A DNA stretch of 64,000 bases from Euprymna scolopes (lineage: Eukaryota): assembly GCA_053919585.1 (NCBI GenBank), contig CM132803.1. The stretch is one strand, 5' to 3'. The notes below the pieces were generated by a model. That model had not been told where the DNA came from. It ran no database searches and saw only the letters and a program-made list of their open reading frames with translations. The number at the start of each line of letters is the position of its first letter. Position 1 is the stretch's first letter. Position numbers and translations under genes: made by a program. This document shows, one piece after another, positions 12,987 to 51,263 of the stretch.

Positions 12987-15788
12987 TGTTCTGTTCCACA
13001 GTTTAGATAAAATAAAAGATAATTGTGACTTAAGAGTTAAGCCCCTTACTTCTTGCTAGGTAGAAAAGAAAAATGACTCAGTGATCCCCCTTTGCGCCCT
13101 AGACTTATATCCCTTTTGATCTTTTCTCATAGAAAGGTAATATTTAGTTGGACACCGGACAAGTAAACGGTAGTCCTTTAGTAACCGCGTGGAATCAAGG
13201 TATTCAAATGTGAAGTAATCCCGTTGCATCGGCAGAAACAAACGGTATGTCAAACTTATATTAAAACATTTAGGACTATTTCATATTAAGAACATTTATC
13301 TGACCCTATTTTCGAAGTTTCTTGACATTTTATCTTCATCGGAATTGTGACATTATTCTTCTTCTTCCATGCGTTTCCTAATCGTTTGTTTTTCTCTCTC
13401 TTCTTCCTTTTCAGTTTTTACTTCTTAAATAAATATACCTGTTGATACTAAAATGACTATCTTCAGAGTTCCTTTGTTTTTGAAGTCAGTTGGCTTGCTG
13501 TAACGAGTTTTTCTACAGGTTGTTCCAGTACAGTAAAAACGTTTGTCTCCATTGCTGACGAGAAAGACAACAGTCCATAACAGGAAACCCATGCACCGGA
13601 ATACTAACCCATACTGCCCAAAGAATTTCATATTTATAAAATGGCTGATAACTGACTCTTACAGGATGAGGTCGAGGGCTTCACGCTCCACAAAATCGTC
13701 TAGCAGGTCCTCTGCAGCAGCCGCAGCACGTGGTAAAGCTGAAGCTGCAAAGGCTCGTCTCAAGTTCGCAGATGAAGAAACTAAATTAAGGTTAGAGAAA
13801 GCAAGGTTGGAGGCAGCTATGGACTTGTTATCTTTGAATAAGGAAGCCGTTGCTGCTGAGGCTAAAGTCGAAGCACTTGAAACTGCAGAACAACAAAGCA
13901 CTTGTAGCCATCCCAAACTGGACCCCACTCCACCTGAACCCATAAAACGCACTCTAGAGTATCTGGCCGATCAAGCAACACGCGGGCTGGAGTAGGTAAC
14001 GCCCCAGGAAAACCTTGACGAAGTTAGAAAGGACTCCTCGAAATACCACACCTCTACACCTCCCTTTATAAACGAGAATGGTTTGTGGCCCACAAACTCC
14101 ATTGTCAGCACTGACCGGCCCTCGCAGGGCGTGGATATCGACGTACGCCCTCATAGGATCAGGAACACCAGTCTGGACACTCACAGACAAAACAAACTCT
14201 TATCCGCCCTGGAACACCAGACTTATTTTATGCGGTACCTTGCTCGTCGCGAGCTCATCTCTACAGAACTCTTCAAGTTTGACGACAGGCCCGAAAGCTA
14301 CCGATCATGGAAATACTCCTTCAAGAATGTTGGTTTATCAGCCAGCCAGGAGATAGATTTGTTGGTAAAGTGGCTCGGCAAAGAGTCTTCAGAACGTGCC
14401 CAAGCCATCAGGGTCGTCCACCCAAACAACCCGGAAAAGGGTTTAAAGACAATATGGACTAGACTCGAAGAGTGTTACAGCTCGCCAGAAATAATTGAGG
14501 AAGTACTCTTCAAACGTGTCGACAACTTCCCCAACATTAATGCTAAGGACCCAGTTAAACTAAGAGAGTTCAGCGATCTCTTGAGTGAACTACAGTCTGC
14601 CAAAAAGGATGGAGACCTTCCCGGACTCATTACGTTAGATACCCACCGAGGTATAAACCCCCTGGTGCAAAAGCACCCCTTCAGTTTACAGGAGAGGTGG
14701 ATGTTTTGGGGCTCCGAATACAAGGATTGCAACCATGTTCACTTCTTACCCTTCAAAGCATTTGTTGACTTTGTTAGCCACCAGGCTAAGGTTCAAAATG
14801 ACCTGAGTTTCATGGTACTACCTCAAACTAACAAGACAGCTTGAAAGATGAACGATATCAGTGCACAACACTCATCAACCCAGACAAGAGAAACAGAAGG
14901 ATCGAAGACCCCAACCAACAGTGTCCTCTACATAGAGCACCTCATCCTCTCCAGAAGTGTCGTGCTTTCCGTGAGAAGCCCTTAGAAGAACGTCTGGCCT
15001 TTCTAAAGGAGAAGGGAATTTGTTTCAGATGTGGTGAAACAACACGCCACCTTGCGAAAAACTGCAAGACAAGAACTAGGTGCATTGAATGTGATAGTGA
15101 TCGGCATATTACAACACTCCACCCTGGACTAAGTCCAAACCCGCCAACGAGTATGGCGGGGAGGAAGACCCAGATCAGACAACAAACGTGACTTCCCAAT
15201 GCACCGAAGTGTGCGGTAGCAACCTCACTGGAAGGTCCTGTTCCAAGATCAGCTTTGTTATGGTCTATCCCAAAGGTCAACGAAATAAGGCCATAAAAGC
15301 CTATGTCATTATAGACCAGGGGTCACCAAACTACGGCCTGGTGAACTCACGTCGCGGGCCAGATTCGGCCCGCGACGTGAGTTCACCAGGCCCGTCGACG
15401 TTGAACTGACGTCGCTTCCTCGGCTTGTGGTAGCTCCGCCTACGCTCTGACGTCACCATGGTTTCCATCGCTTTAAGACCTTTGTGAGAAGGTTGTTTAT
15501 CTTAAAAAAATAGATTTGCCAATGATGTTTTAAAAAAAAAGATTCTTGCAATTTTTCGACTTATTCATTTATCTCAAAGCTGTGCAAAGTTCAATCAAAA
15601 AAATATTTGAAAATTTTTTAAAATAATAGAAATATCATTCTTAACTAAATTTCTTAAAAAAGACGTGCCAACATCAAACTGAAGAACTAAGTGGAAAAAA
15701 TTTAGAAATACTATTCACAACAACTTTCGACTTTTTTCCACTGAACCACTACCATCTCGGAATGGTAAATGTAAAACGATGGATATTT

Positions 15789-38893: not shown

Positions 38894-40019
38894 TGTTATG
38901 ATGTTATGATTTAGATCTCGTTTTGACTTGGGGACGCCGTCATACTGTCTGCCACGTGTCACCGTGACGACCACCACTCAAGTTTCATGATTCCTGACCG
39001 CTTTAGGGAGAAACTGACTACGTAGGGATTCACGCTACGATCGCTACCATGGCACCAAAGTCGAGGCACATGATCATGGTTACCTCCACAAAATTACGGG
39101 CAAAACGCTTAGATGCCTTACACACCGTAGCGAAAACAACAACCCAAAAGAAACACAGTTTTCTCGACATGGAGGCAATTTCTTCATCACTAACCGTTTG
39201 TCTACAACTACGTCCGCGTGCTTGCTATATTTAGCGAAGCCAAGGAAAAGACAGCAGAAGGACCACCAGCCTCGCCATCACCACAACGCTACGGCTGTCG
39301 CGACCAATGCTACTACTACTACAACGAAGGCTTCGGCGCGCCTTCTAACAACAACAACTATCGCTATTGACACACGATTATAACCAGCACTACCATTACC
39401 AACGAAGGCTTCGTCGCGCCTTCTAACAACAACAACTATCGCTATTGACACACGATTATAACCAGCACTACCATTACCAACGAAGGCTTCGTCGCGCCTT
39501 CTAACAACAACAACTATCGCTATTGACACACGATTATAACCAGCACTGCTGCTACTACCATTACCAACGAAGGCTTCGTCGCGCCTTCTAACAACAACAA
39601 CTATCGCTATTGACACACGATTATAACCAGCACTGCTGCTACTACCATTACCAACGAAGGCTACATCGCGCCTTCTATCAACAACAACTATCGCTATTGA
39701 CACACGATTATAACCAGCACTGCTGCTACTACCATTACCAACGAAGGCTTCGTCGCGCCTTCTAACAACAACAACTATCGCTATTGACACACGATTATAA
39801 CCAGACCAGCACTGCTGCTACTACTATTACAAACGAAGGTTTCGTCGTGCCTTATAACCACAATAACAACAACTAACAACAATCTGCCATCTTCACCCCA
39901 AGGACAGCTCGTTATTATTCTGTGTTATTTATTAGAAAATAAATTGTTGAGTTCGTTCAAATCTTAATCCTGTGTTGTCTATTCTTTTTGCTTGTCACCA
40001 TACGCTTCATAACATAACA
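38894..40019 (+). mobile_element. Solo LTR (1126 bp) with internal tandem array
   Basis: TGTTATG...CATAACA termini, 4-bp TSD AGGA, AATAAA near 39938; site is empty in Tc1 copies 1 and 2. Confidence 0.85.
39322..39860. repeat. Minisatellite, ~7 units of 78/87 bp
   Basis: Units start near 39322, 39400, 39478, 39565, 39652, 39739, 39831; core CAACGAAGGCTTCGTCGCGCCTTCTAACAACAACAACTATCGCTATTGACACACGATTATAACCAGCACT. Confidence 0.95.
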
Positions 40020-48097: not shown

Positions 48098-50098
48098 GAA
48101 AGACATTTACTGCGGGTTAACAGTTGAGGACACTTCTGGTAGCTGGGGCTTCCAGTAAGATGGCGTTCTGGAAATAAAAGGTGTTTTAAACTACTCCGAG
48201 TCAATCTCTTTCCTCATATCTCTTCCACAGGACATCCTGGTCTCTACTCACTCATAATGATATTAAATAAGTATCTGCAAGGTAAGACAAACTTTTTTAT
48301 TGTCACACTCACAAATAGATAAACTTTGCTTATATAAATCACATACATAATCAACCATATCTCTGACAGGATAAATACAGCACTCTCCTTCAATACTAGT
48401 GCACAAGTACATGTATTTTGTGACTTCAATGTCCACCACAGTAATTGGCTTGGATTCTCTACTTACACAGACACAGCTGATAGCATAACGCATAGCTTCT
48501 CTATCTCATTGCCTATTACAGATGCTACATTTCTGACACGTTAGCAAGATCAGCATGCCTCACTTCTAGATCTATTTCTGACCACAGTTCCCGATGATGG
48601 TGTAACAATTGTCCATAGTCCACTCGGAACTGCTGATCACGCTGTGATAATGGTAGAAATTGCCCTAAATTCTCAACCCAAAACTGAAGAGCCATTGCTC
48701 AAAACAACAAGGTATTATAAGAAGGTTGACTGAGAAGCCATCAGGGATCTATAGTGAGCCGTTTAGACCTGCCAAATTTGCTTTGTCTGGATCAAACACA
48801 CAGACACAGAACAAGCTGCGTGCAGTAGCACACACGCATAGAGCAGAGCACGCGCAAACATAACATAACTTTGACACGCGTATATTTCCGGTGACCTTTG
48901 ACATAACCTTCCGTTTACGTCCTTTTTCTCTCTCTCTCTCTCTCTTTTTCGCTTGACATCAAGCCATGCACACAATAAACCACGCGCTTCATAAGCATGC
49001 ACTCAGAGAGCGACAGCAATAACATGAGGTAGGCTTGTATATTTTTCACATAAATATTGTTACTTGTAAGATGCATACATAGAGAGCACACAATATGAAC
49101 AATTCAAGACTCGGAGAATGTGGTGAAATCAGATGAACTCTCCCATAAGCATCCGTTGATTATCTCCCTTTCCTACTTCCTGTACAGGCCCCTTCCCTTT
49201 ACCCTGATACCTCCTTTTTCGAGTCTCCTCGTGGTACGCACGCTTCTCTCATGGACTCCTCATGTGAGGATTTAGTTCAATAAAGCTCACTTGAGCAGTT
49301 ACTCCACTCTTTGCCTTATTCTGTTCTCGTTGGTCACTCTTTCATTACAATTTATTGAACTAAATCCTCTCCTCACTATGGAGAAATATTTAAAACCAGA
49401 ACGGCTACTTCTAGATCCCAGCCAACCTGACGCCGCAGATATCTGGACACATTGGAAAAAATCATTTGCCATCTTTCTCGATGCTGCCGGTGAAACTCAA
49501 CAAACTCCTCTGACTGACAGGCTTAAATTCAGCCTCCTCATTAATCTCGTCTCTCCAACTATCTTCAAAAATATTTCTGACGTGGACTGTTTTAATTCCG
49601 CGATGGACATACTGGACACCATTTTTATACAGTCTAAAAATAGCATCTTTTGTAGGCATCTTTTGGCCACACGCCATCAACAAACGGACGAAAGCATCGA
49701 CCAATATTTACAGTCGTTAAAAACCCTTGCCAAGGATTGTGAATTTCGTGCCGTCTCGGAGACGCAAGCGAGAGATGAATACGTTCGAGACGCTTTCATA
49801 AATGGAATTTCATCGAACTATATTCGACAAAGACTCTTAGAGAATGGGTCGCTGGACTTAAAAGCCGCTTACAACCAGGCACTCGTTATGGAAACGGCTC
49901 AGAAACAATTAGCATCCTATTCTCGAACGAATGCCGTAAGCGCGTCTACCCGAGCCGAGGAAACAAACATCACCCCACACTCCACACCCGAACGGATTGT
50001 AGCTGCTGTCGCACGCTGTTACTTTTGTGGAAGAGGGAAGCACAACAGATCTGAGTGTCCCGTGCGAAACGCCGGCGTTTCGCGCGGGACACTCAGAT

Positions 50099-51263
50099 AT
50101 CAGACACTGATATCGTTACAGACATCCAGAAAGAGAGAAAGGATTGTGAATTCATTGTCCAACATCACAGCAAACCGGTGAATATCAAGGTCGATGCAAC
50201 TATGTCTATGATTGATGGTAAGATGCATAGTCTTATATCTGGTTTGGGTGGGGCATTTTGTTGCTTGTGTACATACAGTAAAGAACAATGTCATGATTCT
50301 GTCTGTATCACCACTGGTTTCAAAATTGATCGTTCCTTGGAACAAACACTAGCCCTCTGTGAGAAAGGAATCCATCTTCCAGAAAACCGAAAGGTTGGTG
50401 ATTATGATGATCGCAAAGGTATCACCCAGGATCCTATTACCATCGAAGATATCAACAACTTGCATCCTCTCCATAATTTGCTGAGATGCTTTGGATGGAT
50501 CTTCAAGATTTGTTATCATGCCACTGCAGGACATTATTCATGGTCAGAAGCAAAGATGGACGTATCCAACCGTATCGCTAGAACATTGGCATTTCTAAAA
50601 CAAGCGAAGGAACAGATCCAGACCAAGGTAAAGGAAGAGACATCAATCACCATGGAGAAACCTGATCCAACAGGTCACGGGGGTACGTCTACGACAGGAA
50701 ATGTGGCGTCACTTATGCTCAATACTAGCAACAGAAGGTTGTTGACTGATGGAATTGATAACACCGAATTGAAGTTAAAGATTGACCGCATTATACTTCG
50801 TATGGTGGTTATTCTAACGATAAACAACTCAAACAAGAACGTCAGGGTTGCTGAATTTTAGGAGTTTTGCCGTGAAACATACCTTCTTGTCAATAAAATA
50901 TCGTGGATTCAAATCAGTCCAAGTGCACACGTTGTTCTTGGTCACAGTGCAGAACTTATTGAACAGAACGACGGCAAAGGTTTGCTGAACTTTACGGAGT
51001 GTGGCATCGAAGCAAATAACAAATTCCTAAGGCAGTATCGAATGAACTATGCACGGAAAACAAGTCAATTTGACAATTTATCCGATTGTATTAACAGACT
51101 GTGGGATAAAAGTGACCCTATGGTGTTGAAAGTATGTGAACGACTACAGTGCACTCATTGTAAAGGAGCAGGTCACACAATACGAAGCTGTGATGAGTTG
51201 AAGGAAGCACTTCATCAATGCAACAGCGAATATGAAGCACTAGTTGCCTTCTTGTCTTACTGA
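50099..51263 (+). pseudogene. RAG1-core-like transposase, C-terminal two thirds (one in-frame TAG at 50859-50861)
   Basis: MIDGK (second catalytic Asp), CCLC, PLH, GGTSTTGN, HVVLGH, ECGIEANNK (catalytic Glu), YARKTS, LWDKSDP, tail CTHCKGAGHTIRSC; ORFs 50055-50861 and 50982-51263 are in the same frame. Confidence 0.88.

What the first reader, a model, noticed from the sequence alone, without database searches (positions are those of the whole stretch)
49266..49369. tRNA-independent Gypsy: PBS position is complementary to the LTR's own poly(A) signal (family 2)
Seen: one base after the 5' LTR there is no TGG; TTTATTGAACTAAATCCTC (49351-49369) is the perfect 19-nt reverse complement of GAGGATTTAGTTCAATAAA (49266-49284) in the LTR. 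Established: Tf1-type elements self-prime by pairing the PBS with the transcript 5' end. Inference: self-priming in which the primer strand ends in AATAAA, so the same duplex would also mask the 5' LTR polyadenylation signal, while the 3' LTR (no downstream complement) stays active. I cannot tell whether this lineage is already named.
Basis: partly seen in the sequence, partly recalled or inferred. Interest (0 to 1): 0.75.

Follow-up and report, generated by a model that had tools for sequence, protein, structure and literature searches.

The report
Self-priming Gypsy element, poly(A)-overlapping primer
A small Gypsy-type jumping gene has no tRNA primer site; the site pairs with a stretch of its own terminal repeat that ends in the poly(A) signal, and ten related families in molluscs, insects and a flatworm keep this pairing, so the lineage very probably primes its own reverse transcription as fission-yeast Tf1 does.

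Summary
49266-49284 is the perfect 19-nt reverse complement of 49351-49369. The second arm starts one base after the true LTR end (LTR 49119-49349), and there is no TGG for 28 nt.

The element is a compact, about 4.3 kb Ty3/gypsy element without a chromodomain. The window copy is dead.

Eleven families share one layout: family 2, a second family in the window at 57095-57275, and nine from other hosts. The layout is LTR...ACA, one A, then TTTATT or TTTAAT plus 6-13 nt, complementary to an LTR segment that ends in AATAAA or ATTAAA. All 132 cells over the 12 core pairs are Watson-Crick, and 7 of the 12 positions show two-sided changes. Copies with identical LTRs keep the pairing.

Tf1-type self-priming is therefore strongly supported by comparison, about 0.8. 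It is not shown by RNA data: the transcription start and the cleavage site remain inferred.

It has the HIV-1 polyA hairpin as precedent.

The scan found this clade before on other DNA of this genome (s1-275121, s1-295548).

Verdict: a new variant of a known kind.

The parts
49112..49118 (+). 7 nt identical to the end of the polypurine tract (CGGAGAA), retained at the left end of this copy
   Evidence: The same 7 nt precede the 3' LTR here and in L031-L034. The empty-site paralog shows they are part of the insertion.
49119..49349 (+). 5' LTR, 231 bp, TGTGG...TTACA
   Evidence: Boundaries come from four full copies with 5-bp target duplications. 3' LTR matches of other copies end at 49349.
49266..49284 (+). 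Self-primer arm (inferred primer). Its last six bases, 49279-49284, are AATAAA, the only canonical poly(A) hexamer in the LTR
   Evidence: Perfect 19-nt complement of 49351-49369. Invariant in 29 of 30 copies. It is the only hexamer in the LTR.
49285..49296 (+). Small hairpin starting at the first base after the hexamer (GCTC-ACTT-GAGC)
   Evidence: The minimum-energy fold has a stem starting at +1 in 9 of 11 families, with G-C/A-U and C-G/U-A exchanges. Most family-2 copies carry a C.A mismatch here.
49297..49349 (+). Rest of R plus U5 (inferred). The poly(A) site should lie in its first part
   Evidence: Inference from the usual 10-30 nt distance between hexamer and cleavage site. There are no RNA data.
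49350..49350 (+). Single unpaired A between the LTR end and the PBS
   Evidence: Present in all 11 families.
49351..49369 (+). Primer binding site, complementary to the LTR arm and not to a tRNA
49378..50074 (+). gag, 5' part (the CCHC knuckle lies further on in intact copies), cut by a foreign insertion at 50075-51990
   Evidence: Translation. Comparison with L031-L034. The identity of the insertion comes from earlier notes s1-275126 and s1-275098 and was not retested.
51991..53354 (+). Remaining pol fragments. About 1.7 kb of RT-RNaseH-IN is missing at about 52740
   Evidence: Blast against L031-L034. Pfam on the intact L031 ORFs.
53355..53367 (+). Polypurine tract GAGCGGCGGAGAA
   Evidence: It precedes the 3' LTR in all copies examined.
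53368..53500 (+). 3' LTR with a 98-bp internal deletion that removes the arm and the AATAAA
57095..57111 (+). Arm of the second Gypsy family in the window (CTTTTTAGCTGAATAAA)
   Evidence: Intact copies L076-L085 keep 17 bp with a 57-nt spacer.
57259..57275 (+). PBS of the second family, again one A after the LTR's ...ACA

Best explanation
This is a copy of a compact, chromodomain-less Ty3/gypsy retrotransposon whose lineage starts minus-strand DNA synthesis with a piece of its own RNA and not with a host tRNA. The transcript is inferred to start at or just upstream of 49266. Its first 12-19 nt, ending in AAUAAA, fold back over a 33-69 nt loop and pair with the PBS, which begins one base after the LTR. 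As in Tf1, the element's RNase H is inferred to cut the RNA at the 3' end of the duplex, after AAUAAA, leaving a 3'-OH that is extended through U5 and the rest of R. The strong-stop DNA then moves to the 3' R. Because plus-strand strong-stop DNA copies the primer, the PBS is rewritten from the arm in about half of the progeny. That would explain why pairing is perfect in every family. Shown here: the pairing, its position and its covariation. Inferred: the start site, the cut and the enzymology.
For: The 19/19 complement lies exactly where a PBS belongs and is far beyond chance. There is no TGG for 28 nt. The best match to 108 distinct tRNAs from this genome is 7 nt. Eleven families share the layout: two in this genome, plus Pieris, Loxostege, Ischnura, Macrosteles, Macrosiphum, Trichobilharzia and three unnamed assemblies. 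In all of them LTR...ACA, A, TTTAWT plus 6-13 nt is complementary to an LTR segment ending in A(A/T)TAAA. 132 of 132 cells over 12 pairs are Watson-Crick, and positions 5 and 7-12 have 2-4 pair types. Two families in one genome carry different PBS sequences, each matching its own LTR, which no conserved host RNA can explain. Copies with 100% identical LTRs and open gag-pol frames keep the pairing. A hairpin abuts the duplex in most families. Tf1 also needs a stem-loop for priming (title of Lin & Levin 1998, cited in PMC5443660). The mechanism is established for Tf1, Tf2 and Tj1 (PMC5341516, PMC4600332).
Against: There are no RNA data: the transcription start, the poly(A) site and the cut are not observed. 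No TATA or initiator motif lies at a fixed distance from the arm, and in L036 a TATAAAA about 60 nt upstream of the hexamer would predict a start some 30 nt before the arm. The tRNA set tested was narrow, mostly Thr and Lys from one array. The youngest family-2 burst carries an uncompensated mismatch at pair 13. A relative with 55% pol identity (L087/L088) has the hexamer but no complementary PBS, so the trait is not universal among close kin. The window copy itself is dead.
Confidence: 0.8

Rival explanations
1. One reading: besides priming, the same duplex hides the AAUAAA of the 5' R from the cleavage and polyadenylation machinery. The 3' copy has no PBS downstream, so it stays open and is used.
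For: The hexamer lies wholly inside the duplex in 11 of 11 families, always at its 3' end. The only variation seen is AATAAA to ATTAAA, the commonest functional variant, with the matching TTTAAT in the PBS. The paired hexamer is the only canonical one in 5 of 6 complete LTRs. The PBS emerges right after U5, that is, as soon as the downstream element is transcribed. Precedent: the HIV-1 polyA hairpin represses 5' polyadenylation, and over-stabilising it blocks the site (PMC2645353).
Against: It is untested. If the hexamer lies only 12-19 nt from the cap, cap proximity alone may silence it. U5 is not clearly more T-rich than U3, so the poly(A) context is only partly typical.
Confidence: 0.35
2. 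The overlap of primer and poly(A) signal is a by-product of a very short R. The primer must open R, and the hexamer must lie 10-30 nt before the end of R. The 5' signal is then silent for other reasons, such as cap proximity or U1 snRNP.
For: The LTRs are tiny, 144-231 bp in the six complete ones measured, with only 32-68 nt between the hexamer and the LTR end. Geometry therefore pushes the two elements together.
Against: Geometry would also allow the hexamer just after the primer. Yet the 3' end of the duplex coincides exactly with the 3' end of the hexamer in all 11 families, which points to a specific constraint.
Confidence: 0.45
3. The primer is the copy of the arm in the 3' R, used in cis by circularising the RNA or in trans from the co-packaged RNA, and not the 5' end of the transcript. 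The start site could then lie downstream of the hexamer.
For: The arm lies upstream of the poly(A) site, so it is present at the 3' end of every transcript wherever transcription starts. No promoter motif fixes the start upstream of the arm (and my inspection).
Against: R would shrink to under about 20 nt. The cut would leave the primer attached to about 4 kb of RNA. Copying U3 would then need a second RNA. No known element works this way, whereas Tf1 and Tf2 use the 5' end (PMC5341516).
Confidence: 0.07
4. The duplex is only an RNA structural element, for packaging, dimerisation or control of gag translation. Priming would use an unidentified host RNA or tRNA fragment.
For: Long-range 5' UTR pairings exist in many retroelements. 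My tRNA set was incomplete.
Against: There is no other PBS candidate between the LTR and the gag ATG, which are only 28 nt apart. The paired site sits at the fixed PBS position, LTR end +2, in every family. The PBS differs between families within one genome.
Confidence: 0.05

Closest known systems
Tf1, Tf2 (Schizosaccharomyces pombe) and Tj1 (S. japonicus), self-primed Ty3/gypsy elements
   Same: The PBS is complementary to a segment of the element's own LTR (R) and not to a tRNA. The duplex ends where the cut is needed. A stem-loop lies next to the duplex (PMC5341516, PMC4600332; title of Lin & Levin 1998).
   Different: Those elements are fungal chromoviruses with a chromodomain. Here none is found in the pol or in the 120 best relatives. 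I know of no report that the Tf1 primer holds the poly(A) hexamer (my own knowledge, not checked; the primary papers are not held). The duplex here is 12-19 bp.
Tf1/Sushi group of vertebrates, plant Tcn1 clade, copia TAR/Houba
   Same: Self-priming is predicted from PBS-LTR complementarity (PMC6317226, PMC2864245).
   Different: These are chromoviral or copia lineages in other hosts. This clade is non-chromoviral and occurs in molluscs, insects and flatworms.
Gypsy C-clade, 'K02A2.6-like', and Steamer-like elements
   Same: Compact single- or near-single-ORF gag-pol elements with short LTRs, widespread in marine invertebrates. The relatives found here carry the K02A2.6-like label that PMC8905726 links to the C-clade.
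   Different: Steamer has a classical 12-nt tRNA-Leu PBS that begins with TGG (PMC8905726). This clade has TTTAWT plus a self-complement. Phylogenetic placement was not tested here.
HIV-1 polyA hairpin and foamy-virus 5' poly(A) suppression
   Same: An RNA structure or context decides that the R-borne AAUAAA is ignored at the 5' end and used at the 3' end (PMC2645353, PMC3694450).
   Different: In HIV-1 the hairpin is local and present at both ends. Here the partner strand would be the PBS, which exists only at the 5' end, and the same helix would be the priming duplex.

Membership tests
Ty3/gypsy (Metaviridae) LTR retrotransposons | Domain order PR-RT-RNaseH-IN, with a gag zinc knuckle | tested here: met
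   Pfam on the intact copy L031 gives Asp_protease_2, zf-CCHC, RVT_1, RT_RNaseH, Integrase_H2C2 and rve. The best solved relative is Ty3 Gag-Pol, 7q5b, E 3.8e-62.
Ty3/gypsy (Metaviridae) LTR retrotransposons | TG...CA LTRs, a target-site duplication, and a polypurine tract before the 3' LTR | tested here: met
   TGTGG...TTACA, with 5-bp duplications in L031, L032 and L040, and the PPT GAGCGGCGGAGAA. The window copy itself has no duplication.
Self-primed LTR retrotransposons (functional class defined by Tf1) | No tRNA-complementary PBS next to the 5' LTR | tested here: met
   No TGG for 28 nt. The best complement to 108 distinct tRNAs of this genome is 7 nt, but that set is narrow.
Self-primed LTR retrotransposons (functional class defined by Tf1) | PBS complementary to the element's own LTR, maintained by compensatory change | tested here: met
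   11 families, 132 of 132 Watson-Crick cells, 7 of 12 positions with two-sided changes.
Self-primed LTR retrotransposons (functional class defined by Tf1) | The complementary segment is the 5' end of the transcript | not testable with these tools
   There are no RNA data. The Logan contigs are 30-nt-overlap cycles and give no transcript ends. There are no conserved promoter motifs.
Self-primed LTR retrotransposons (functional class defined by Tf1) | RNase H cut of the RNA duplex releases the primer | not testable with these tools
   This needs biochemistry or sequencing of strong-stop DNA.
Tf1/Sushi chromoviruses | Chromodomain at the integrase C-terminus | tested here: not met
   No Chromo hit in the 778-aa pol at E 0.01 or better. 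PF00385 is absent from the precomputed domains of all 120 listed relatives.
Tf1/Sushi chromoviruses | Phylogenetic placement of RT/IN within the group | not tested
Steamer-like / Gypsy C-clade | tRNA-Leu PBS TGGTGTCAGAAG directly after the LTR | tested here: not met
   The sequence after the LTR is A + TTTATTGAACTA.... The Steamer PBS is taken from PMC8905726.

The most novel reading that the evidence does not exclude
One helix does two jobs in an animal-wide Gypsy clade. It is the self-priming duplex for reverse transcription. Because one strand is the AAUAAA and the other, the PBS, exists only at the 5' end, it is also a position-dependent switch that silences the 5' poly(A) signal and leaves the 3' one active. 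Copying of the primer into the PBS at each cycle would keep the switch perfectly paired without selection on each base.
Probability: 0.3. Interest if true: 0.75.

Novelty: new variant of a known kind. Interest (0 to 1): 0.6.

Why it matters
Self-priming has been regarded as a trait of the Tf1/Sushi chromoviruses and a few plant lineages. A second, chromodomain-less clade that is young and active-looking in molluscs, Lepidoptera, Hemiptera, Odonata and a schistosome would show that the trick is either older or repeatedly evolved.

It also matters for annotation. Pipelines that look only for tRNA-type PBSs (for example the 12-nt tRNA search in PMC13524379) will report these elements as having no PBS.

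If the duplex also controls the 5' poly(A) signal, it would be a very economical answer to the old question of how identical LTRs behave differently at the two ends. It could be tested with a 150-nt reporter.

Elements that do not depend on tRNA primers should also escape host defences that target the PBS with tRNA fragments.

Tried and rejected
1. Poly(A)-tailed retrocopies of the LTR, to map the poly(A) site. A pattern search of the whole genome found none.

2. Transcript ends from public assemblies. The two Logan contigs (L035, L086) begin and end with the same 30 nt, so they are de Bruijn cycles and say nothing about the start or the poly(A) site.

3. tRNA test. The genome search for RF00005 returned one array, and ARAGORN gave 108 distinct sequences, nearly all Thr or Lys. 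The test is therefore only partial.

4. Test of the idea that the PBS is rewritten from the primer, by asking whether PBS position 13 (A or T) is homoplastic on a tree of 28 copies. The tree is almost unresolved. It gives 5 changes against 9.0 for shuffled labels, and the young burst is 11 T to 4 A. The result is inconclusive. My first attempt was wrong because the palindromic arm misoriented 11 loci.

5. Promoter motifs. There is no TATA or initiator at a fixed distance from the arm across families (inspection).

6. A T-rich downstream element. U5 is not clearly more T-rich than U3.

7. A third site with ACAATTTATT, at 39938 on the minus strand, is a chance match with no LTR.

8. The family L087/L088 (55% pol identity) lacks the layout. 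Its LTR end could not be fixed, so I use it only as a hint of the clade's limit.

9. The primary Tf1 papers (PMC230564, PMC109269) are not held.

Full report
**Observation**

Window 49266-49284 (GAGGATTTAGTTCAATAAA) is the exact reverse complement of 49351-49369, with no extension on either side. Comparison with four full copies elsewhere in the genome fixes the LTR as TGTGG...TTACA = 49119-49349 (231 bp), with 5-bp target duplications (GAGGG in L031, AGTGG in L032). The second arm therefore starts at LTR end +2, after a single A. The next TGG is inside the gag start codon at 49378.

The pairing is not a chance event:
- The window holds only five non-simple perfect inverted repeats of 15 nt or more with a 20-150 nt loop. 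Two of them are the PBS pairs of the two Gypsy families, and 20 shuffled windows gave none.
- The RNA 49266-49380 folds at -32.4 kcal/mol, z = -6.9.

**What the element is**

The genome is 5.9 Gb and holds at least 40 copies about 95% identical to this one. Intact copies are about 4.28 kb. L031 has two open frames:
- gag with a CCHC knuckle and the start of the protease, 334 aa
- RT, RNase H and integrase, 778 aa

The best solved relative is Ty3 Gag-Pol (7q5b, E 3.8e-62). No chromodomain is found in this pol or in the precomputed domains of its 120 best relatives. Those relatives are 55-80% identical and come from insects, a schistosome and unnamed assemblies. Many are annotated 'K02A2.6-like', a label that PMC8905726 links to the Gypsy C-clade.

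The window copy is dead:
- A 1.9-kb foreign insertion lies at 50075-51990. Earlier notes call it a Transib fragment; I did not retest this.
- About 1.7 kb of pol is missing near 52740.
- The 3' LTR (53368-53500) has lost 98 bp, including the arm and the AATAAA.

**Comparative test**

The second Gypsy family in the window has the same layout with a different sequence. Its LTR ends ...ACA, then A, then TTTATTCAGCTAAAAAG (57259-57275), which pairs with CTTTTTAGCTGAATAAA (57095-57111). Intact copies L076-L085 keep 17 bp with a 57-nt spacer.

I fetched the DNA around nine further relatives. Every one of them shows LTR...ACA, A, TTTATT or TTTAAT plus 6-13 nt, complementary to an LTR segment 33-69 nt upstream that ends in AATAAA or ATTAAA.

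| Locus | Source | Duplex length |
|---|---|---|
| L036 | unnamed assembly | 12 |
| L035 | unnamed assembly | 12, plus 4 after a bulge |
| L038 | Pieris | 13, ATTAAA |
| L041 | Loxostege | 13, ATTAAA |
| L040 | Trichobilharzia | 14 |
| L042 | Macrosteles | 15 |
| L037 | unnamed assembly | 16 |
| L039 | Ischnura | 16 |
| L043 | Macrosiphum | 16 |
| L086 | unnamed assembly | 16 |
| family 3 | this genome | 17 |
| family 2 | this genome | 19 |

The count below uses one representative for each of eleven families. L035 is left out because its pair is split across the ends of the contig.
- All 132 cells over the 12 pairs nearest the hexamer are Watson-Crick.
- Position 5 and positions 7-12 each show 2-4 different pair types.

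A conserved host RNA cannot explain PBS sequences that differ between families in one genome and each match their own LTR.

Copies with 100% identical LTRs and open frames (L038, L039, L040, L043) keep the pairing.

Within family 2 the arm is invariant in 29 of 30 copies. The 12-bp core of the PBS is intact in 29 of 30. The most recent burst carries an uncompensated A-to-T change at pair 13. Together with the 12-bp duplex of L036, this suggests that the 12 pairs next to the priming site are the essential core.

**Mechanism**

The layout is that of Tf1, Tf2 and Tj1. There a segment at the start of R pairs with the PBS, the element's RT/RNase H cuts the RNA at the end of the duplex, and the released 5' fragment primes minus-strand synthesis (PMC5341516, PMC4600332).

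Applied here, the primer would be the 12-19 nt ending in AAUAAA. The cut would fall after 49284. Strong-stop DNA would copy U5 and the remainder of R and then move to the 3' R.

Plus-strand strong-stop DNA copies the primer, so the PBS of the progeny is rewritten from the arm in about half of the cases. This is inference from the retroviral and Tf1 scheme. It would make the extent of perfect pairing a footprint of primer length and would place the start near 49266. My attempt to test this by homoplasy of PBS position 13 was inconclusive.

A small hairpin begins at the first base after the hexamer in 9 of 11 minimum-energy folds, with G-C/A-U and C-G/U-A exchanges between families. Tf1 also needs a stem-loop next to its primer (title of Lin & Levin 1998, cited in PMC5443660). 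In most family-2 copies this hairpin has a C.A mismatch, so I treat it as a lead.

Not shown here: the start site, the poly(A) site and the cut.

**The poly(A) idea**

The paired hexamer is the only canonical one in 5 of 6 complete LTRs. It varies only to ATTAAA, with the matching change in the PBS. It lies 32-68 nt before the LTR end in the six complete LTRs measured. It is therefore very probably the poly(A) signal.

It lies wholly inside the duplex in all eleven families, and the end of the duplex coincides with the end of the hexamer. Masking of the 5' copy by the PBS, which the 3' copy lacks, is therefore plausible and has a precedent in the HIV-1 polyA hairpin (PMC2645353).

Nothing here tests it, however. 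A hexamer 12-19 nt from the cap may be silent anyway. U1 snRNP at a downstream donor is another known route (PMC3694450). I give masking about 0.35.

**What is known, and novelty**

Self-priming is described for Tf1/Sushi chromoviruses, the plant Tcn1 clade and copia TAR/Houba (PMC6317226, PMC2864245). Near relatives in name use tRNAs: Steamer uses tRNA-Leu (PMC8905726) and Cer1 uses tRNA-Pro (PMC3315495). In nine literature searches I found no description of self-priming in this chromodomain-less animal clade, or of a primer that contains the poly(A) signal. The held library lacks most subscription journals, so this absence is weak evidence.

The scan itself found the same clade earlier on other DNA of this genome (s1-275121, s1-295548). 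My family table was built independently and agrees with it. I class the finding as a new variant of a known kind.

**Limits**

- The tRNA set was narrow.
- One relative at 55% pol identity (L087/L088) lacks the layout.
- There was no phylogeny with reference elements.

Noticed in passing
window 49112-49118, 53501 and the paralog at 55777-56142: This copy has no target-site duplication, and its left end carries the last 7 nt of the polypurine tract. An uninterrupted paralog of the flanks (…AAGACT|GTCATATT…) shows that the insertion is exactly 49112-53500. This looks like an integrase-independent insertion of a cDNA that kept its plus-strand primer, as described for Tf1 in PMC11042837.
   Followed up: partly
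window 53368-53500, against 49188-49285: The 98-bp deletion in the 3' LTR runs from a GCCC microhomology in U3 to within one base of the end of the AATAAA, which is the predicted primer cut site. A slip at strand transfer should mark both LTRs, so a deletion in the 3' LTR only is unexplained and may be coincidence.
   Followed up: partly
window 49285-49296 and the same place in L036-L043, L076, L086: A 4-5 bp hairpin starts at the first base after the poly(A) hexamer in most families (stems GCYY.../ACCTT...), with two-sided changes between families. It stacks on the priming duplex.
   Followed up: partly
L010, L013-L015, L017, L021, L022, L024-L027 (PBS position 13): The youngest burst of family 2 (end branches 0-0.5%) carries TTTATTGAACTATATCCTC, which gives a U.U mismatch at pair 13. 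Sister copies with the same linked markers have the matching A (11 T to 4 A).
   Followed up: partly
window 57097-57170 and 57187-57260: The 5' LTR of the family-3 copy has a 90-bp tandem duplication that moves the arm to 147 nt from the PBS. Other copies have a 57-nt spacer.
   Followed up: partly
L033 (5' LTR end): The U5 end is duplicated (…TTTTCATTACA TTTTCATTACA A TTTATTG…) with an extra ACAAT. This may be a template slip at the U5/PBS junction.
   Followed up: no
L087, L088 (marine metagenome contigs): A relative with 55% pol identity and a homologous gag start has AATAAA in its LTR, but no TTTATT PBS and no self-complement of 8 nt or more before the ATG. It is a possible outgroup with another priming mode.
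   Followed up: partly
window 1-48000: Most of the first 48 kb is a tandem array with a period of about 11.2 kb and 96-100% identity between units.
   Followed up: no
window 15335-15392: A perfect 26-nt GC-rich inverted repeat with a 6-nt loop.
   Followed up: no
G000 contig C11, about 1.68-2.16 Mb (L044-L073): A dense array of tRNA-Thr and tRNA-Lys genes.
   Followed up: no
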